Shown one piece after another: positions 44,409-49,757 of a DNA stretch of 64,000 nucleotides. The stretch covers positions 62,001 to 126,000 of the IMG/VR virus record IMGVR_UViG_3300021142_000002. The stretch is one strand, 5' to 3'. The notes beneath the pieces are model-generated. The model had not been told where the DNA came from. It did no database searches and was given only the letters and a program-made list of their open reading frames with translations. Position numbers and translations under genes: made by a program. Within the stretch, counting starts at the first letter, position 1. Every line of letters begins with the position of its first letter.

Positions 44409-44438
44409 AGATAATGTATTGATCTATTTTCATTGATT
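44409..44438 (-). promoter_or_regulatory. Early promoter
   Basis: AATCAA-N14-TACATTATCT. Confidence 0.6.
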
Positions 44439-44605
44439 TATCTGTTAATAAAATTACTCCAGATACTTGTTGTTACATCGGGTAAATTGATAACACTACT
44501 TAATTGCCCTAGATTAGTCGAATCATGAATACCATAGTGCGACTCTAGTAATCTACCCGCTTCTTGATGCCTTTTATCCATTAAAAGGAACATATTCATT
44601 TCGTC
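44438..44605 (-). CDS. nvRNAP beta' exon 4 (55 aa)
   Basis: DEMNMFLLMDKRHQEAGRLLESHYGIHDSTNLGQLSSVINLPDVTTSIWSNFINR*. Confidence 0.85.
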   Translation of the reverse strand, partial: DEMNMFLLMDKRHQEAGRLLESHYGIHDSTNLGQLSSVINLPDVTTSIWSNFINR

Positions 44606-47087
44606 CGTATTGTTCAGATAGAGTCGTTAATTCTATCCCGTAGTGATTAACTACTGCTAATACTCTCGTATTAGACCAGATCATGTCTTTACCGATTAGT
44701 ATTTCTTTAAAATACTAATGAAGGTACCTCCCATTTCTTCCCACTTGGGTTCTACTCCGCATAACCGGATGATCGTTGAACTTTTTCCATATACAAATAC
44801 TGTACTTAGGAACTTAGCTGCATAGTTATCTCTATTTACTATATTTTCAAACTGTGGCATTATCTTTCGATAATACAGTAGTATAGTAACTTAACAAGAT
44901 GTTCTAGCAATTAAAGAGGGTTCTATCTTAATATTTCTATTAAGTAGGGCATTTGCATACCATCATACGTATTGTTCAGATAGAATCGTTAATTCTATCC
45001 CGCAGCTTTACCTGCATCGCTAACACTTTCATGTTAGACCAGACTATATCTTCTACTAACTAGATTTAATTAGTAGCCCACCACTTCGAGATTACTTAAT
45101 CTCTACACCACGCAACCGGTTAGTCGTTGAACTTTACTCATATGCTCAGTAGAGCACTTAGAGTCTTAGCTGCTGATTGCCCAATCTTTATTATTTTTAA
45201 ACATTCATATTTCTTTTCAAAAATACAGTAGTTAATAAAGCTCTAAGGGGTTTCCAGCAATTCAATGGGATTCTTTATAACCTTACGACTATAAAGGACT
45301 CTAATTTCACTTATACTTAATTTAAATACCATCATAAAAAAGATGCTAGATAAAATAGGAATTATATAAGCATTTGATATCTGCATTGCATCCACGCAGC
45401 ACTAGAGTAGAAAAACTGATTGTTTTATCCTTTAAATCATTTTTTACTTTAGTTATATAAAAACATTGTGCAGATAGTCTTCCAAGACTAGGCATATATC
45501 TTTAAATAAGGTCGTTAATCTTATTTCTACTAATGTAGCTCTTACTCTCGTAAGATGTTGAGACTATATCATTACCTTTTACTTACTTTGTAAGTAAGCA
45601 TTCAGGCACACACCACTTCGAGATTACTTAATCTCTACTCTACTCGATTCAATTTATTCAATCGTCTTTCGATAGTCGTTGAACGTTCTCCTTATCTCGA
45701 TAATAGACTTAGGAGCTTCGCTGCTGATTGACTCTATTTACTATTTTTCAAACTATGGTATTATCTTTCAATAATACAGTAGTATAGTAACCTAACGAGT
45801 GATTCCAGCAATTAGATGTGTTTAATCAACAATATTTCTATTGAGGGGAACCCAATAACTTATGGTTATATGAAATAATAGTTTACAGAAATAAATCTGA
45901 TGATATTAAACTATAAATTATTTATATAAATTCCGTTGAAATAAAACCATAATCCCTCTGCATGGTAAAGGCGTTATTTCAAATTTTGTAACTCGTTTTA
46001 TTTCTGGCCCTTCATTAATTAGTTCTTGTATAATTTCGTCTATTAACTTATTATACATATTGCCACTATTTTCAACTAAATCATAGGCTCTTTTAGAACT
46101 AAAATTTCGCTGCATTAATTTAGAAACAATATGAACCTTTAACATCTCTAGACCCTGGGCCCAGGGTACATGTATTTCACTATATGAATGAGGTACATTT
46201 AAAGATGTGATCACCGCCCGCATACAAAAGTGTGATCTAGAACAATATAACTGTCCTCTAAACCATCCCTTCTTTAAACAGAATGTACCCTTAATCGTTG
46301 CAACATGATAAGCTACTAGATTAGCTATAACAGAGACTACTTTAGTTTCTATCTGGTTATCCGTTAATGGCTTAGACCTAGGCATGCTAATGTTAGCGAT
46401 TGTTCTACAAGCATCAATAGCGCCTGTAATAGATCGTTTATCTGCCCATGCGCCTGTTTGGGTATTTTCTACAATTAACATAGCCTTGGTAGGCACGGGT
46501 AAATACTTTGGAAATATTTTATTTCTAATGGCTTTAAGAAAGTAACAATAATCCAAAGCTTTATTCTTAGTTAATATAGGCAATATCTCTAAGAATTTAT
46601 CAAAGTTTCTAATAAAGTAATTTAATCCTCGCTCCCAACCTATGGATTCTAAATACTTTATTTTCTTTTGTGACTCTTTTGTTAAGTTACTAGGTACTTT
46701 AGCTCTGGAGTTTGTTAAATACTCCATGATGGAATAAGAGCCTCCTAGATGAGTATTTAACTGTACCCAGACTTCAGGTACAATAAATCCATCTATTCCA
46801 TCCGGTACTCTTATCCATGTTCGCATATCTATATTGCCTTCAGCAGGATAAGTAACAGGGGTATTGCAATTATCACAATACTTGTTTTCTTTAAATCCAT
46901 ACTTAGTATGCCCACAAGCGCAAGTAGGTACAGAGCCCAATACATCTGATTCATAAGTCGTTAGAATTAATGAATTAAAGGCAGCTCTATCTTCCTCTGT
47001 TTGATAAGGCACATCATTTAATACAACTGGTTTGACTACCTTAGTAAAAACAGTATCAAAGTCCGGTATATCAATGTAGTTTGACAA
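44438..47087 (-). CDS. rpoC: nvRNAP beta' catalytic subunit (phiKZ gp55-like), 4 exons, 482 aa spliced: join(47087-45930, 45492-45379, 44967-44959, 44605-44438)
   Basis: Zn motif CACG..CDNC in exon 1; the spliced junctions rebuild FQRN|PSL and GCNAD|YDG|DEMN; all phase 0; TTG start with GGAG RBS. Confidence 0.88.
44606..44958 (-). ncRNA. Group I intron 3 (353 nt, ORF-less, IA-like)
   Basis: 5' exon ends in U with P1 GGU/AU-GCAA-AU/GCC; P AAUUGCUAGAA; R GUUCAACGAUCA; S GACAUGAUCU; GAGA-capped P9; terminal G. Confidence 0.85.
44959..44967 (-). CDS. nvRNAP beta' exon 3: 9-nt microexon TAT GAT GGT (YDG)
   Basis: Preceded by the omega-G of intron 2, ends in U, and supplies the middle Asp of the catalytic DxDGD. 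Confidence 0.8.
44968..45378 (-). ncRNA. Group I intron 2 (411 nt, ORF-less, IA-like)
   Basis: P AAUUGCUGGAA; Q AAUCAGCAGC; R GUUCAACGACUA (45121-45132); S GAUAUAGUCU (45041-45050); GAAA-capped P9; terminal G. Confidence 0.85.
45379..45492 (-). CDS. nvRNAP beta' exon 2 (38 aa)
   Basis: PSLGRLSAQCFYITKVKNDLKDKTISFSTLVLRGCNAD. Confidence 0.85.
45493..45929 (-). ncRNA. Group I intron 1 (437 nt, ORF-less, IA-like)
   Basis: P AAUUGCUGGAA; Q AAUCAGCAGC; R GUUCAACGACUA (45673-45684); S GAUAUAGUCU (45561-45570); 5' exon ends in U; terminal G. Confidence 0.85.
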
Positions 47088-47099
47088 ATTTATAATCTC

Positions 47100-47192
47100 C
47101 TATAATAAATGTTCAAATAGATAATTTCCTATGGCAGAAGCTGTAATAAAAATAACTAATATATAGACTAACTCCCTGATAAAATGATACAT
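47100..47192 (-). CDS. Small membrane peptide (30 aa, not in ORF track)
   Basis: MYHFIRELVYILVIFITASAIGNYLFEHLL; AAGGAG RBS. Confidence 0.6.
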   Translation of the reverse strand: MYHFIRELVYILVIFITASAIGNYLFEHLL

Positions 47193-47196
47193 TGAC

Positions 47197-47331
47197 TTAC
47201 TCCTTTCTTTTATAGAAAAGAACTGTTAAACGCTTAGCGATAAAGTTAGCAATAGATTTTTCAGATGTTATCATTACTATTAAGAAAATGATAGCCAATA
47301 TAAAGGCCAATAAATCTGGATCAATTATCAT
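47197..47331 (-). CDS. Small membrane peptide (44 aa, not in ORF track)
   Basis: MIIDPDLLAFILAIIFLIVMITSEKSIANFIAKRLTVLFYKRKE; TAATG coupling to the upstream ORF. Confidence 0.6.
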   Translation of the reverse strand: MIIDPDLLAFILAIIFLIVMITSEKSIANFIAKRLTVLFYKRKE

Positions 47332-47537
47332 TAATGTCCTATTTGTAAAATGTTAAGTATAGTAGAAATAGATGAAATAATAACCGTTAATAAAAACCCT
47401 ACTAATAAAGGAATAGAAACATAAGGCACTTTATTATTAGCATCTAAATCCTTTAATTCTAAACGAATGATGTTTCTAATGAAGTAGGTTAATCCTAGCA
47501 TCATTATTATTAACATCAAAGAAATAATATACATCAT
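47331..47537 (-). CDS. Small two-helix membrane protein (68 aa)
   Basis: Two hydrophobic segments; GGAG RBS. Confidence 0.65.
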   Translation of the reverse strand: MMYIISLMLIIMMLGLTYFIRNIIRLELKDLDANNKVPYVSIPLLVGFLLTVIISSISTILNILQIGH

Positions 47538-47574
47538 AAAAATTCTCCAAAATTATTGACTAGATTTAAATGGG

Positions 47575-47691
47575 TTATTGAGTGAGCCCAAATAAAGAAA
47601 GTAATTTAGCCGCACTAGATGGATAAAAATTATATATAGTTATAGCTATAATTGTTGTTACTACCAGCACATAGCTGAGTATAAATAGCAT
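47575..47691 (-). CDS. Small membrane peptide (38 aa, not in ORF track)
   Basis: MLFILSYVLVVTTIIAITIYNFYPSSAAKLLSLFGLTQ; AGGAG RBS. Confidence 0.6.
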   Translation of the reverse strand: MLFILSYVLVVTTIIAITIYNFYPSSAAKLLSLFGLTQ

Positions 47692-47730
47692 TGTTTTCTC
47701 CTAAAATGAAAAAATAAAAGGGCATAAGAA

Positions 47731-47760
47731 AGGGATAGCAGATTTAAATCTGCTATCCCT
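47731..47760. repeat. 30-bp perfect palindrome after chmA
   Basis: AGGGATAGCAGATTT|AAATCTGCTATCCCT. Confidence 0.85.
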
Positions 47761-47771
47761 ATTTTACTTAA

Positions 47772-49757
47772 TTATCTTTGGTTCCAAGTAGAAGCCAAAG
47801 GTGATGTTGTTCCATAGTGCTGTGGATTATAACCTGGTTGGTTATAATTTCTTTGGTAGTAAGAAGAAACACCATGACCTTGCAGCGGAGTAATGTACTC
47901 GCTATTAAATGATTGACGTTGTACCATAGAAGACATATCAGATAGACCTTCAATAGTTACAGCAATGCCGCATTGTGCGTGCATTTCTTCAATAGTATTG
48001 ATGAAATCATTATTGAAGAAGAACCGTGAAATCAATCCAGTCACTGTAAAGTTAGGCGCCATTTGTTTACGGATATTACGTTTGATATCCATGTCTTCTA
48101 AAGAGTTATTGCCTGGATAGAAACCTAAGGCAAATGAATCAAAGAATGTCATGTCGCCTGCTGAATAACTTAAGCAGGTCAGATAATCAATAGTTCGACC
48201 ATCACGTGCTCTACCATTTGTATCAGTGTAATAACCGGCATGTAAATCCACACGCAGCGTAGAATTAGTAGCACGATCGTATTGCATGATAGGTTTATTC
48301 TTTGGCAGCCATAATTTGCTGAATACACCGCCTGAATAAGCATCCAATTCATTAATAATAATAGATTCTTCTTTAGAACCCGGTACAGCACCTGCAAACA
48401 AAGTTTGTAACCATTCAGTTGGACTGCCTTTAATGATATCCATAGCGACCAGCACAGTACGAGTGCAATACATAGCTGCCATCGCTTGAGCAGTTACTTT
48501 ATCTTCACCCACCATAGGGTCAGAGCCGCTAACAACAGTTAGTTCTTTAGGAACAAATTGTTTTTGTGGCATTGGCAATGGATCATGTTCAAGACCTAAG
48601 ATACCTAAGTTAGGTTTCAACTGATTATCACCTACAAAAGGTTCAAAGATAGTAGCCCATTTATTTTGGGTAGGGTCTAGTAATGGTAATAATGATGGCA
48701 GCGCTAATAGCTGAGTCAACAAATTATCATTAGACCGACTAGATGCACCTAAAGATGAAGTGTTTGTAATCACAAACACTGGATCATAGCCTGGAGTAGG
48801 TACTGGGTAACCAGTATAAGGTGCTTGCTGAGTAGGTACTCTGCGGTAGAAATCCATATAGCCCGCAATAGCCGTTAATGCAATTTCATCTTGTTGATTA
48901 CTAATAGCACGAACATCAGTGCTAATTGGTTTACCTGCTTGGCGTGCATAAAGGACCACGTTAACATCGGCGACATAAGGCTGATTAACAGATGATAAAT
49001 AAATGCCGCCTGGAGTGACATCAAACTTAGATACCAACTGTACAGTATTGTTAGCCAATACATTAACAGTGACTGGCGAGGTTGGTAAGTTTTGTTTGCT
49101 GCGCATAGTAGCGCTGATGGCAGCCAAGGCATGGTCATAGAACTTAGCGAGTGAATTAATATTCAACAACTCAACCGTTTTTGGCACCACCATGTTAGAT
49201 GCACAAACACTGCCATTTGATTTACCCGATACATTGCCAATAACATTTTCAACGATTTCTCGAGTTTGTTTGTTCCAGAATAGAGCTGGAAACATGTCAA
49301 TTTCAACCGAGCGATTATTTCTACCAATGTTTGCATGCTTATTAGCTAGTGGGCGAGCCATTTCTTCAAACATTAATGTACTATAGTACACTAAGTTTGT
49401 TCTGCTACATTTAAACCAAAGTGCAACAATCGCAATTGGAATGCGTGGATCTTCAACTGGAAGGACTTTAACTTGTAGAATGGTTGGATTATTTTCAACC
49501 CGTTTTTGCACATCCGCCAATGCTTTCAGCAATTCAGTAGTATTACCTGAACCTACATTGCCAGATGCAGTAACTGAAGATAAACCCATTAAGGCATCAA
49601 AACCGACTGTAGCTGCTGAACCTGCATTGCCACTTACATAGGCTGATGCTTGAGATTCAAACGTATCATTAGTTTTGTGCTGTTGCTGATTGCCACGACC
49701 TGTGGTTAGAATTACTTCATCTTCCTCAAAGCCTGGGCGATTAGTAGTATTATTCAT
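47772..49757 (-). CDS. chmA: Chimallin, phage nuclear shell protein
   Basis: 661 aa; position upstream of the gp55-like beta'; C-terminal segments (HAGYY..GRARDGRTIDYL; FTVTGLISRFFFNNDFINTIEEM..CGIAVTIEG) parallel the recalled ChmA sequence; disordered termini. Confidence 0.85.
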   Translation of the reverse strand: MNNTTNRPGFEEDEVILTTGRGNQQQHKTNDTFESQASAYVSGNAGSAATVGFDALMGLSSVTASGNVGSGNTTELLKALADVQKRVENNPTILQVKVLPVEDPRIPIAIVALWFKCSRTNLVYYSTLMFEEMARPLANKHANIGRNNRSVEIDMFPALFWNKQTREIVENVIGNVSGKSNGSVCASNMVVPKTVELLNINSLAKFYDHALAAISATMRSKQNLPTSPVTVNVLANNTVQLVSKFDVTPGGIYLSSVNQPYVADVNVVLYARQAGKPISTDVRAISNQQDEIALTAIAGYMDFYRRVPTQQAPYTGYPVPTPGYDPVFVITNTSSLGASSRSNDNLLTQLLALPSLLPLLDPTQNKWATIFEPFVGDNQLKPNLGILGLEHDPLPMPQKQFVPKELTVVSGSDPMVGEDKVTAQAMAAMYCTRTVLVAMDIIKGSPTEWLQTLFAGAVPGSKEESIIINELDAYSGGVFSKLWLPKNKPIMQYDRATNSTLRVDLHAGYYTDTNGRARDGRTIDYLTCLSYSAGDMTFFDSFALGFYPGNNSLEDMDIKRNIRKQMAPNFTVTGLISRFFFNNDFINTIEEMHAQCGIAVTIEGLSDMSSMVQRQSFNSEYITPLQGHGVSSYYQRNYNQPGYNPQHYGTTSPLASTWNQR

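What the first reader, a model, noticed from the sequence alone, without database searches (positions are those of the whole stretch)
44606..45929. The three introns are mosaics of each other, with a compensated P7 change
Each pair shares a different near-identical block. Introns 2 and 3 share their last 35 nt with 1 mismatch (44606-44640 vs 44968-45002). Introns 1 and 2 share 28 identical nt (45079-45106 vs 45611-45638). Introns 1 and 3 share about 60 nt with 3 substitutions and 1 indel (44830-44890 vs 45732-45791). P7 is GACUAU/AUAGUC in introns 1 and 2 but GAUCAU/AUGAUC in intron 3, a double compensatory change that points to selection on ribozyme structure. Inference: local intron proliferation (reverse splicing into nearby sites) plus inter-intron recombination or gene conversion.
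Basis: partly seen in the sequence, partly recalled or inferred. Interest (0 to 1): 0.68.

Follow-up and report, generated by a model that had tools for sequence, protein, structure and literature searches.

The report
Mosaic self-splicing introns in phage polymerase
Three self-splicing group I introns interrupt the catalytic core of a giant freshwater phage's RNA polymerase gene; they belong to a five-copy intron family in this genome whose members have swapped whole RNA helices by recombination, which is a clear example of known phage-intron behaviour rather than a new kind of element.

Summary
On the minus strand, three ORF-less group IA2 introns (I1 45929-45493, I2 45378-44968, I3 44958-44606) split the beta' N-terminal subunit gene of a chimallivirus-type jumbo phage. 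Removing them restores ...QRN|PSL...NAD|YDG|DEM..., the NADFDGD catalytic motif, with a 9-nt exon between I2 and I3.

- **Blocks.** All three shared blocks are as described. Each is a self-contained helix module: the P5 arm, P7.2 plus the 3' strand of P3, and P9.2 plus the 3' end.
- **P7.** The change in I3 is doubly compensated.
- **Family.** The genome holds two more members outside the window. I4 lies in a second beta' gene. I5 lies in the beta gene and carries an HNH endonuclease ORF.
- **Recombination.** With five copies the mosaic is statistically strong (PHI p<=2e-4). I2 and I5 are about 98% identical over 98 nt. Among about 100 unrelated phage IA2 introns the best match to any block is 83% or lower.
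- **Origin.** Inter-intron gene conversion is well supported. Reverse splicing is not. The same sites are occupied in distant orthologues, one with an HNH gene. I2 contains a copy of exon 3. I4 and I5 sit in identical 12-nt targets. These point to DNA-level spread.
- **P7 variant.** It is an inherited rarer allele, about 4% of background introns.

No RNA data exist, so splicing is inferred.

The parts
45930..47087 (-). Exon 1 of the beta' N-terminal subunit gene (RNAP 'A'); ends ...VLFQRN. The start codon is not verified.
   Evidence: PHROG 2987 'RNA polymerase beta subunit', E 1e-91. It is 30-35% identical to the Goslar, FLC9 and phiKZ-like orthologues. Translation.
45493..45929 (-). Intron I1 (437 nt, ORF-less group IA2) at site S1, QRN|PSL. 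The internal guide sequence (IGS) GUUCC at 45847-45851 pairs with exon GGAAU. P7 is 45672-45677 / 45562-45567.
   Evidence: Rfam 68 bits. It has U at -1 and a terminal G. The junction is fixed by the intronless FLC9 sequence ...QRNPSLERG....
45379..45492 (-). Exon 2 (114 nt, 38 codons, PSLGRL...RGCNAD).
   Evidence: Colinear without gaps with the FLC9, Goslar and L127 orthologues.
44968..45378 (-). Intron I2 (411 nt, ORF-less) at site S2, NAD|YDG. IGS GUCC at 45296-45299. P7 is 45120-45125 / 45042-45047.
   Evidence: Rfam 91 bits. The MFE fold pairs exon GAU with GUC, giving U.G at the splice site. The same site and the same IGS occur in L109a and L110.
45320..45336 (-). Pseudo-exon inside the P1 loop of I2: a 17-nt copy (15/17) of exon 3 plus the first 8 nt of I3.
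   Evidence: Local alignment against shuffles, p about 0.004. It is in frame with NAD, but a TAG lies between.
45165..45262 (-). P4-P5 arm of I2, about 98% identical to I5 (genome 162614-162711, 55 kb away): the clearest conversion tract.
   Evidence: blastn 97.96% over 98 nt. A run of 38 shared polymorphic sites, global p 1e-4. I5 contigs cross-map here in other samples.
44959..44967 (-). Exon 3, a 9-nt micro-exon (TATGATGGT = YDG) inside the NADFDGD motif.
   Evidence: It is required to restore NADYDGDEM. The 5' splice site of I3 uses its last 3 nt in P1. The same 9-nt exon architecture occurs in L109.
44606..44958 (-). Intron I3 (353 nt, ORF-less) at site S3, YDG|DEM. P1 is GGU|AU-GCAA-AUGCC (IGS 44948-44952). 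P7 variant GAUCAU/AUGAUC at 44769-44774 / 44679-44684.
   Evidence: Rfam 54 bits, fold, P7 table. A compensated G-C to A-U change in P4 is seen only in I3 (columns 71/200).
44438..44605 (-). Exon 4 (DEMNMFLLMD... to the stop codon).
   Evidence: ORF list. It aligns with DFDGDQLNF (FLC9) and DFDGDEMTGN (L127).
45611..45638 (-). Block shared 28/28 with I2 (45079-45106): the P7.2 hairpin with its AAGU loop, plus the 3' strand of P3.
45732..45791 (-). P5 extension arm of I1 (P5a-b-c with a GAAA loop), shared with I3 (44830-44890) and, less closely, with I4.
44606..44640 (-). P9.2 hairpin plus the 3' terminal segment of I3, 34/35 identical to I2 (44968-45002).
   Evidence: The stem covaries across 12 introns.

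Best explanation
The region holds three ORF-less, probably self-splicing group IA2 introns in the gene for the beta' N-terminal subunit of one of the two multisubunit RNA polymerases of a nucleus-forming (chimallivirus-type) freshwater jumbo phage. Each intron is inferred to splice in the standard way. A guide sequence just 5' of P2 pairs with the last 3-5 exon bases, with a U.G at the cut. P7 supplies the guanosine site, and its G-C and A-U pairs do not vary. A terminal G marks the 3' splice site. Splicing joins four exons, one only 9 nt long, to rebuild the Mg-binding NADYDGD motif. The three introns belong to a family of exactly five in this 220-kb record, all in RNA polymerase genes. I4 lies in the second beta' gene at ADFDGD|K. 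I5 lies in the beta gene at CGD|K, and only I5 keeps an HNH homing-endonuclease ORF. The mosaic arises because co-resident copies recombine at the DNA level (gene conversion). The exchanged tracts that persist are whole structural modules (P5 arm, P6, P7.1, P7.2 with the 3' strand of P3, P9.2 with the tail), each of which carries both strands of its own helix, so the ribozyme still folds. P7 is formed by two strands about 90 nt apart and is kept complementary by selection. The GAUCA/UGAUC form is an older allele of this intron lineage. Shown: the introns, the exon model by homology, the mosaic, the covariation and the extra family members. Inferred: actual splicing, gene conversion as the process, and DNA-level (endonuclease-assisted or duplication) spread of the copies.
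For: Introns: Rfam hits at 54-91 bits. Module HMMs find exactly five members in the record. Host gene and phage type: PHROG matches to an RNAP subunit and to chimallin. Exon model: the spliced product is colinear with intronless FLC9 ...RNPSL...NADFDGDQL. Seventeen of 28 orthologous loci have an intact NAD[FY]DGD. Every junction has U at -1 and a terminal G. Guide-sequence/exon complementarity sits at the homologous position in 9 of 12 introns compared. Mosaic: segment identities are P4-P5 I2/I5 99%, P6 I4/I5 95%, P7.2 I1/I2 97%, tail I2/I3 75% with the last 35 nt at 34/35. The site partitions {I2,I5}, {I1,I2}, {I4,I5}, {I3,I5} are mutually incompatible, and PHI gave 0/5000 permutations. The run test gives global p 1e-4 for I2/I5 and 0.01 for I1/I2. 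Not generic: the background maximum is 64-83%. Blocks are helices. Structure and covariation: 27 of 35 consensus pairs have compensatory changes. P7 pair types; background P7 counts are 95 CU/AG, 4 UC/GA, 1 CC/GG, and none uncompensated. Real DNA: independent contigs and samples. Co-resident introns cluster by genome rather than by site, and L109a/b are 93% identical in P4-P6. DNA-level spread: the HNH ORF in I5 is about 31% identical to the HNH genes of the L109 S3 intron and of Goslar. The exon-3 copy lies inside I2. I4 and I5 have the identical target GGTGAT|AAAGTC.
Against: There is no RNA evidence. All 15 public runs that hold the sequence are DNA metagenomes, so splicing and inclusion of the 9-nt exon are inferred. 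The P1 helices of I2, I4 and I5 have only 3 exon base pairs. For I2, a cryptic GGAU 11 nt upstream pairs better with the guide (4 bp). For I4, the MFE fold prefers a register with U-A rather than U.G at the splice site. PHI and run tests can be inflated by correlated changes within helices. With only five sequences and no close relative of the phage, the direction and timing of the exchanges cannot be resolved. Nor can intragenomic proliferation be separated from homogenisation of independently acquired introns.
Confidence: 0.85

Rival explanations
1. One reading: one founder intron proliferated locally within this gene by reverse splicing into nearby RNA sites, followed by reverse transcription and integration. 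The copies later recombined.
For: Co-resident introns are more alike than same-site introns of other phages. I2, I4 and I5 share the guide GUCC, and all three follow an exon GAU, as expected if a short guide chose the targets.
Against: I2 holds a copy of exon 3 plus the start of I3, and reverse splicing moves only intron RNA. I1 and I3 have different guides (GUUCC, GCC) matched to their own exons. S2 and S3 are occupied in distant orthologues L109 and L110. The 3'-exon identity of the I4 and I5 targets (AAAGTC) has no visible P10 partner. No reverse transcriptase was looked for or seen. [quoted passage not shown]
Confidence: 0.1
2. Independent acquisition: each site received its own site-specific intron by endonuclease-mediated homing from other chimalliviruses during co-infection. 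The present resemblance among copies is entirely later concerted evolution. This is a variant of the best explanation that differs only in where the copies came from.
For: The S2 intron occurs in L110 and L109, with the same GUCC guide and a similar ...CTGAACA.ATACG end. The S3 intron in L109 carries an HNH ORF. The P7-P8 module of I2 is closest to same-site L109a (73%). The P7-P8 modules of I5 and I3 are close to L127 (77% and 71%). I1 shares two exact P7.1 patches (15 and 13 nt) with the Goslar intron. Seventeen of 28 orthologues are intronless, so occupancy is dynamic.
Against: No orthologue examined has an intron at S1. The identical 12-nt targets of I4 and I5, in two different genes, look like an intragenomic jump. 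The pseudo-exon in I2 suggests a local duplication or unequal crossover. Similarities to outside introns are modest (at most 78%).
Confidence: 0.4
3. There was no recombination. The shared blocks are simply the conserved consensus of phage IA2 introns, or convergence under structural constraint.
For: The modules exist in recognisable form in unrelated introns: the P9.2 tail at 83% in L080 and P7.2 at 82% in L024 and L027. Loop motifs such as AAGU and AUUAACGAC are family-wide.
Against: Within-genome identity (97-100%) far exceeds the background maximum (64-83%). The blocks are pair-specific and mutually incongruent. Ninety-eight nt at about 98%, flanked by sequence at about 55-60%, cannot be constraint.
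Confidence: 0.03
4. The mosaic is a metagenome assembly chimera created by collapsing repeated intron segments.
For: Short-read contigs from other runs break inside the shared blocks (records 13-17), which shows that the repeats do disturb assembly.
Against: An independently assembled contig from another sample is identical over 3.7 kb spanning all three introns. Contigs from three other samples, one a different lake study from 2020, bridge I2-exon3-I3 with 0-1 differences. A mis-join would link different genes, yet the exons on both sides of each intron belong to one colinear gene.
Confidence: 0.02

Closest known systems
[quoted passage not shown] 2005, cited in PMC3984707)
   Same: Several related ORF-less IA2 introns packed into one phage gene. 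Short internal exons, so exon skipping is a risk. P7.1/P7.2 insertions between P7 and the 3' strand of P3.
   Different: The host gene here is an RNA polymerase catalytic subunit. Two introns lie 9 nt apart inside the active-site motif. The family extends to two other polymerase genes. Splicing is untested here.
Phage T4 td / nrdB / sunY introns and 'spontaneous shuffling of domains between introns of phage T4' (Bryk & Belfort 1990, Nature; recalled from memory, not retrieved)
   Same: Related IA2 introns in one phage genome recombine through shared core sequences to give chimeric introns. This is the same process proposed for the mosaic here.
   Different: In T4 the chimeras were laboratory recombinants that delete the DNA between loci. 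Here the exchanges are non-reciprocal patches fixed in a natural population, with all host genes intact.
PhiPA3 gp210 intron in the vRNAP beta gene (Birkholz et al., Science 2024, PMC11620839), and the annotated intron plus HNH gene in the Goslar orthologue
   Same: Group I introns with nicking HNH endonucleases, inserted next to catalytic aspartates of chimallivirus RNA polymerase genes. The Goslar intron sits in the orthologous gene at NADF|. I5 here is the same kind of element in a beta gene. The core of I2 is 68-70% identical to phiKZ-family introns.
   Different: The three window introns have no endonuclease gene. Three introns lie in one gene and five in the genome. Nothing is known here about competition between phages.
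Concerted evolution and gene conversion among organellar group I introns (e.g. Wu & Hao 2014, PMC4059233; title and abstract seen)
   Same: Paralogous introns in one genome exchange sequence, so that they resemble each other more than their orthologues.
   Different: This is a phage genome. The tracts coincide with single helices of the ribozyme.

Membership tests
Group I intron (Rfam RF00028) | Conserved P3-P9 core scoring above the curated threshold | tested here: met
   91.3, 68.0 and 54.3 bits against a gathering score of 50, with full-length model matches 1-253.
Group I intron (Rfam RF00028) | P7 helix with complementary strands and the conserved G-C guanosine-binding pair | tested here: met
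   G-C in 12/12 and A-U in 11/12. The third and fourth pairs covary as CG/UA/GC and UA/CG. Of 100 background introns, 100 are complementary.
Group I intron (Rfam RF00028) | 5' splice site after U, paired as U.G with an internal guide sequence (P1); intron ends in G | tested here: met
   All three junctions have U at -1 and a terminal G. P1 is GGAAU/GUUCC for I1, GAU/GUC for I2 and GGU/GCC for I3. The P1 of I2 is short, and a better-pairing cryptic GGAU lies 11 nt upstream.
Group I intron (Rfam RF00028) | Removal restores an uninterrupted, conserved reading frame | tested here: met
   The spliced product is colinear with the intronless orthologues through RNPSL and NAD[FY]DGD.
Group I intron (Rfam RF00028) | Self-splicing activity (GTP-dependent, protein-independent) | not testable with these tools
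   No RNA run holds the sequence. Read laying returned DNA contigs only.
Subgroup IA2 (phage type) | Extra P7.1/P7.2 helices between P7 and the 3' strand of P3, and P9.1/P9.2 extensions | tested here: met
   A 35-55 nt insertion lies after P7 in the Rfam alignments. The P7.2 and P9.2 hairpins fold. P9.2 covaries. The nearest relatives are phage IA2 introns. Formal subgroup assignment by a curated classifier was not done.
Mobile (homing) group I intron | Intron-encoded homing endonuclease ORF | tested here: not met
   I1-I3 have no ORF of 60 aa or more with any family match. Their 5' leaders show no similarity to the HNH genes. Only I5, outside the window, has an HNH ORF.
Mobile (homing) group I intron | Presence/absence polymorphism at the same site among related genomes | tested here: inconclusive
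   Distant orthologues (23-35% aa identity) are polymorphic: 17 of 28 are intronless; S2 is occupied in L109 and L110; S3 is occupied in L109. No close relative exists in the collections, and no intron-minus allele appears in other samples.
Recombinant / gene-converted paralogues | Statistically supported phylogenetic incongruence along the sequence, with pair-specific tracts above background | tested here: met
   PHI 0/5000. Run test global p 1e-4 for I2/I5 and 0.01 for I1/I2. Background maximum 83%.
Reverse-splicing transposition | Precise transfer of intron-only sequence to sites complementary to the guide sequence | tested here: inconclusive
   The guide GUCC and exon GAU are shared by I2, I4 and I5 (consistent). 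However, an exon-3 copy lies inside I2, I1 and I3 have different guides, and the I4/I5 targets have unexplained 3'-exon identity (all inconsistent). The RNA and RT steps are not testable.

The most novel reading that the evidence does not exclude
The pile-up of introns around the NADFDGD codons is the footprint of homing-endonuclease warfare between co-infecting nucleus-forming phages. The pile-up here is two introns 9 nt apart. It recurs in other chimalliviruses as a 9-nt exon in L109, a 15-nt exon in L114 and a roughly 12-nt exon in L113. In this reading, each ORF-less intron persists because it splits the recognition site of a competitor's nicking HNH enzyme, and so immunises an essential polymerase gene. 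Gene conversion among co-resident copies keeps these 'shield' ribozymes splicing-competent. Micro-exons inside an active-site motif would then be a selected outcome rather than an accident.
Probability: 0.25. Interest if true: 0.75.

Novelty: new member of a known kind. Interest (0 to 1): 0.52.

Why it matters
**Annotation.** The gene would be miscalled as a truncated protein plus fragments. The true product carries an intact catalytic motif only after three splicing events, one of which joins a 9-nt exon.

**Intron biology.** This is a compact natural example of five paralogous ribozymes exchanging whole helices while P3, P4, P7 and P9.2 stay complementary. It is useful as a covariation and modularity data set.

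**Phage ecology.** It adds to the evidence that RNA polymerase catalytic motifs of nucleus-forming jumbo phages are hot spots for group I introns and HNH endonucleases (PhiPA3 gp210, Goslar). It also shows that neighbouring insertion sites can be occupied at the same time, leaving micro-exons. That makes the question 'do ORF-less introns protect against competitors' endonucleases?' testable.

Tried and rejected
- **Close relatives.** A near-identity DNA search of 50,697 phage records found no match. Single-protein scans of viral and metagenome contigs returned only this phage itself. Intron presence or absence in close relatives could therefore not be tested.
- **RNA evidence.** No run on record is RNA.
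- **Apparent deletions.** The 'joints' (44759->45673 and 44755->45165) looked at first like deletion alleles. The inserted letters match the P7.1 of I4, and the loose ends match I5. They are paralogues cross-mapping, not intron-less DNA.
- **Endonuclease-gene relics.** I tested whether the long 5' leaders of I1, I2 and I4 are relics of a deleted endonuclease gene. They show no similarity to the I5 or L109 HNH regions (p 0.24-0.97) or to each other.
- **Duplicated exon 2.** I tested whether the 42 nt upstream of the pseudo-exon in I2 are a duplicated end of exon 2. There is no significant similarity. A visual resemblance of that stretch to an intron tail (TTTTATCTAGCA vs TTCTATCTGAACA) did not reach significance and is left as a hint.
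- **Pseudo-exon as the real splice site.** Rejected: a TAG lies between NAD and it, and it has no guide-sequence partner.
- **P10 pairing for I4 and I5.** None was found by eye.
- **Goslar lineage for I1.** I tested whether the whole P7-P8 module of I1 is of the Goslar lineage. Only two short patches are shared, and module identity is 59%.
- **L127/L010 5' splice site.** It could not be fixed. NA|D would put an A at -1, and N|D would drop the alanine.
- **Not attempted.** Protein structure, complex prediction and the large protein searches were not used because the protein family is clear.
Full report
**What is there.** The window is part of a 220-kb IMG/VR virus record (window = record 62001-126000). 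GC content is 33%. It comes from freshwater and lake metagenomes. A chimallin (phage nuclear shell) gene lies at 47772-49757. Directly downstream on the minus strand is a gene matching PHROG 2987, 'RNA polymerase beta subunit' (E 1e-91). This is the N-terminal beta' subunit of a chimallivirus-type multisubunit polymerase, 30-35% identical to its counterparts in Goslar, FLC9, RP12 and phiKZ-like phages. Rfam finds three full-length group I introns on the minus strand at 45539-45867, 45020-45316 and 44657-44966 (68, 91 and 54 bits).

**Exon model.** Reading the minus strand and comparing with the intronless FLC9 orthologue (...IMQRNPSLERGSAQ...KGLNADFDGDQLNF) fixes the structure as follows.

| Part | Window coordinates | Size | Junction |
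|---|---|---|---|
| Exon 1 | 47087-45930 | | |
| I1 | 45929-45493 | 437 nt | QRN\|PSL |
| Exon 2 | 45492-45379 | 114 nt | |
| I2 | 45378-44968 | 411 nt | NAD\|YDG |
| Exon 3 | 44967-44959 | 9 nt (YDG) | |
| I3 | 44958-44606 | 353 nt | YDG\|DEM |
| Exon 4 | 44605-44438 | | |

The spliced frame is open and reads ...VLFQRN|PSLGRL...RGCNAD|YDG|DEMNMF.... This is the universal NADFDGD metal-binding motif. Each 5' junction follows a U and each intron ends in G.

A guide sequence lies at the homologous place just 5' of P2 and complements each 5' exon with a U.G at the cut:
- I1: GGAAU/GUUCC.
- I2: GAU/GUC.
- I3: GGU/GCC, in a tight GGU|AU-GCAA-AUGCC hairpin.

**Check of the observation.** All three blocks are as stated: 35 nt with 1 mismatch, 28/28, and 61 vs 60 nt with 3 substitutions and 1 indel. 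P7 is GACUAU/AUAGUC in I1 and GAUCAU/AUGAUC in I3. I2 reads GACUAA/AUAGUC, so its sixth pair is absent, which is a small correction. Each block is a self-contained structural module:
- the P5a-b-c extension arm with a GAAA loop;
- the P7.2 hairpin with an AAGU loop, plus the 3' strand of P3;
- the P9.2 hairpin plus the 3' terminal segment.

**More of the family.** Rfam over the whole record finds a fourth intron (I4, record 168534-168022, 513 nt). It lies in a second beta'-like gene, inserted at ADFDGD|KVS. A blastn of the introns against the record reveals a fifth (I5, record 164064-162424). It lies in the beta gene at CGD|KVV. Rfam missed it because a 409-aa HNH endonuclease ORF (PHROG 59, E 2e-28) sits between the 5' splice site and the guide sequence. 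HMMs of three intron modules find exactly these five and nothing else.

**Is the mosaic real?** In a five-way alignment, identity changes abruptly by segment.

| Segment | Pattern |
|---|---|
| P4-P5 | I2/I5 99%; I1, I3 and I4 77-83% to each other |
| P6 | I4/I5 95% |
| P7.2 plus the 3' strand of P3 | I1/I2 97%; I3, I4 and I5 90% |
| Last 35 nt | I2/I3 34/35 |
| P7 | GACUA type in I1, I2, I4; GAUCA type in I3, I5 |

The site partitions {I2,I5}, {I1,I2}, {I4,I5} and {I3,I5} cannot fit one tree. The PHI statistic was lower than in all 5000 column permutations.

A GENECONV-style run test on polymorphic sites gave these results.

| Pair | Pairwise p | Global p |
|---|---|---|
| I2/I5 (38 consecutive shared sites) | 1e-4 | 1e-4 |
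| I1/I2 | 1e-4 | 0.01 |
| I2/I3 tail | 0.006 | 0.22 |
| I1/I3 | 0.05 | not significant |

A caveat is that compensatory changes within helices are not independent sites, which can inflate these tests. That cannot explain 98 nt at about 98% identity flanked by sequence at about 55-60%.

**Generic consensus?** A pattern scan of viral contigs returned 93 loci with about 100 other phage IA2 introns. Recognisable versions of the modules exist there, but the best identities are 83% (tail), 82% (P7.2), 64% (P5 arm) and 63% (P4-P5 of I2). That is far below the 97-100% seen within this genome.

**Assembly artefact?** An independently assembled contig from another sample (L102) is identical over window 44468-48192. 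Contigs from three further samples, one from a different lake study in 2020, bridge I2-exon3-I3 with 0-1 differences (records 7, 13, 23). The 'joints' reported there are I4 and I5 contigs cross-mapping onto the shared blocks, which independently confirms those blocks.

**P7 and structure.** Across 12 chimallivirus beta' introns, the G-C and A-U pairs of P7 do not vary. The third pair is C-G (7), U-A (4) or G-C (1), and the fourth is U-A (7) or C-G (4). One of the 12, L113a, is misaligned at P7 there. In 100 background introns, P7 is CU/AG in 95, UC/GA in 4 and CC/GG in 1, with none uncompensated. So the compensated change is real evidence of selection. However, the GAUCA/UGAUC form is an existing minority allele of this lineage. 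It is shared by I5, by L114a, by L127 and by some unrelated introns. It did not arise in this gene.

RNAalifold on the 12 introns recovers P3, P4, P5, P6, P6a, P8 and P9.2, with 27 of 35 pairs showing compensatory changes. I3 alone has G-C changed to A-U in P4.

**Where did the copies come from?** I collected 28 orthologous beta' loci from viral contigs. Seventeen have an intact NAD[FY]DGD. The rest are interrupted within a window of a few codons:
- **L110:** NAD|intron|FDGDAL. This is the same site as I2. The intron is ORF-less, has the same GUCC guide and ends in a similar CTGAACA.ATACG.
- **L109:** NAD|intron|TTTGACGGT|intron with HNH ORF|DALN. This is the same two sites and the same 9-nt exon as here.
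- **L114:** NA|intron|15-nt exon DFDGD|intron.
- **L113:** KG|intron|(Y)NADF|Goslar-type intron.
- **L127-130:** NA|intron|DFDGDEM.

None has an intron at S1.

Module identities show that co-resident introns cluster by genome, not by site:
- this phage's five are 71-91% identical in P4-P6, against 52-72% to outside introns;
- L109a/b are 93%;
- L114a/b are 72% in P4-P6 and 84% in the P9-to-end module.

A few modules do point outward. The P7-P8 module of I2 is closest to same-site L109a (73%). Those of I5 and I3 are close to L127 (77% and 71%). I1 shares two exact P7.1 patches with the Goslar intron.

This is what concerted evolution by gene conversion produces. It does not by itself separate in-genome proliferation from independent homing followed by homogenisation.

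Three observations favour DNA-level events over reverse splicing:
- **Pseudo-exon in I2.** The P1 loop of I2 contains a 17-nt copy (15/17) of exon 3 plus the first 8 nt of I3 (45336-45320; p about 0.004). RNA reverse splicing cannot carry exon sequence, whereas unequal crossover or duplication can.
- **Identical targets of I4 and I5.** I4 and I5 lie in different genes at identical 12-nt targets, GGTGAT|AAAGTC. The six 3'-exon bases have no visible P10 partner in either intron. Recognition by a protein fits better than recognition by a 3-bp guide. The obvious candidate is the HNH enzyme of I5, which is about 31% identical to the HNH genes of the L109 and Goslar introns.
- **Different guides in I1 and I3.** Their guides are matched to their own exons.

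The review PMC3984707 notes that reverse-splicing mobility has no direct experimental support, and that relaxed-specificity endonucleases are an alternative route to ectopic sites.

**Comparison with what is known.**
- Group I introns with HNH endonucleases next to catalytic aspartates of chimallivirus polymerase genes are known: PhiPA3 gp210 (PMC11620839) and the annotated Goslar intron.
- The nearest introns in isolates are phiKZ-family ones, 68-70% identical over 87% of the I2 core, and one in an Aeromonas phage D3 polymerase gene.
- Three related introns in one phage gene, with exon skipping, is the Twort orf142 situation.
- Recombination between related introns of one phage was shown for T4.

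The last two items are recalled from memory and were not retrieved. The present case is therefore a new member of a known kind.

The less familiar aspects are:
- a five-member family confined to three polymerase genes;
- conversion tracts that coincide with single helices;
- two introns only 9 nt apart inside the active-site motif, an arrangement that recurs in distant chimalliviruses.

**Limits.**
- Splicing is inferred, because no RNA run holds the sequence.
- The P1 helices of I2, I4 and I5 are short, and alternatives exist.
- The phage has no close relative in the collections searched, so the direction, age and source of the exchanges are unresolved.

**Verdict.** Interest is moderate.

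Noticed in passing
window 44959-44967 (-): Exon 3 is only 9 nt (TATGATGGT, YDG), flanked by two group I introns inside the NADFDGD codons. Skipping it would give NAD|DEM and a dead enzyme. The same 9-nt exon (TTTGACGGT, FDG) lies between two introns in L109.
   Followed up: partly
window 45320-45336 (-), inside I2: A 17-nt copy (15/17) of exon 3 plus the start of I3 sits in the P1 loop of I2. It is in frame with NAD, but a TAG lies between. It has no guide-sequence partner, so it is probably a dead former splice site. It suggests duplication or unequal crossover at the DNA level.
   Followed up: partly
record 168022-168534 (L002:1451-1963, -) and record 162424-164064 (L007:1725-3365, -), outside the window: There are two further family members: I4 in a second beta' gene at ADFDGD|K, and I5 in the beta gene at CGD|K. 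I5 has a 409-aa HNH endonuclease ORF between its 5' splice site and its guide sequence. Their insertion sites share the identical 12 nt GGTGAT|AAAGTC.
   Followed up: partly
L109:4174-5555: A distant orthologue has the same NAD|intron|FDG|intron|D architecture. The S3 intron carries a 183-aa HNH ORF. The two introns are 93% identical in P4-P6, so homogenisation also occurs in that genome.
   Followed up: partly
L114:4252-4976 and L113:4244-4640: Goslar-like phages have other micro-exons in the same motif. L114 has a 15-nt exon, GACTTTGACGGTGAT (DFDGD), between two introns with P7 variants GAUCA/UGAUC and GAGUA/UACUC. L113 has an intron at KG|Y about 12 nt upstream of the Goslar-type intron at NADF|.
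   Followed up: no
L127:4201-4586 (= L010:5163-5548): If the junction is NA|DFDGD, as in L114, the base before this intron's 5' splice site is A rather than U (GCA against guide GGC). The alternative junction after AAU would drop the alanine of NADFDGD. This is unresolved.
   Followed up: no
window 44616-44624, 44978-44986, 45506-45514 (-): The 9-nt loop of P9.2 (AUUAACGAC in I1 and I3, AUUAACGAU in I2) is nearly invariant in all five introns and common in the background. It resembles the J6/7-P7 sequence UUCAACGAC of the same introns. Its function (a tertiary contact or an alternative pairing) is unknown.
   Followed up: no
window 45390-45393 (-): A GGAU in exon 2, 11 nt upstream of the I2 5' splice site, pairs with the guide GUCC by 4 bp. 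The authentic AGAU pairs by 3 bp. It is a potential cryptic splice site that would shift the frame.
   Followed up: no
L038:2762-5886 (same in L067): An unrelated phage contig has four group I introns in a tail-sheath gene, three of them within 1.1 kb. Tight intron arrays are therefore not peculiar to polymerase genes.
   Followed up: no
window 47772-49757 (-) and 45930-47087 (-): The chimallin gene lies immediately upstream of the beta' subunit gene, the same order as in Goslar (L005).
   Followed up: no
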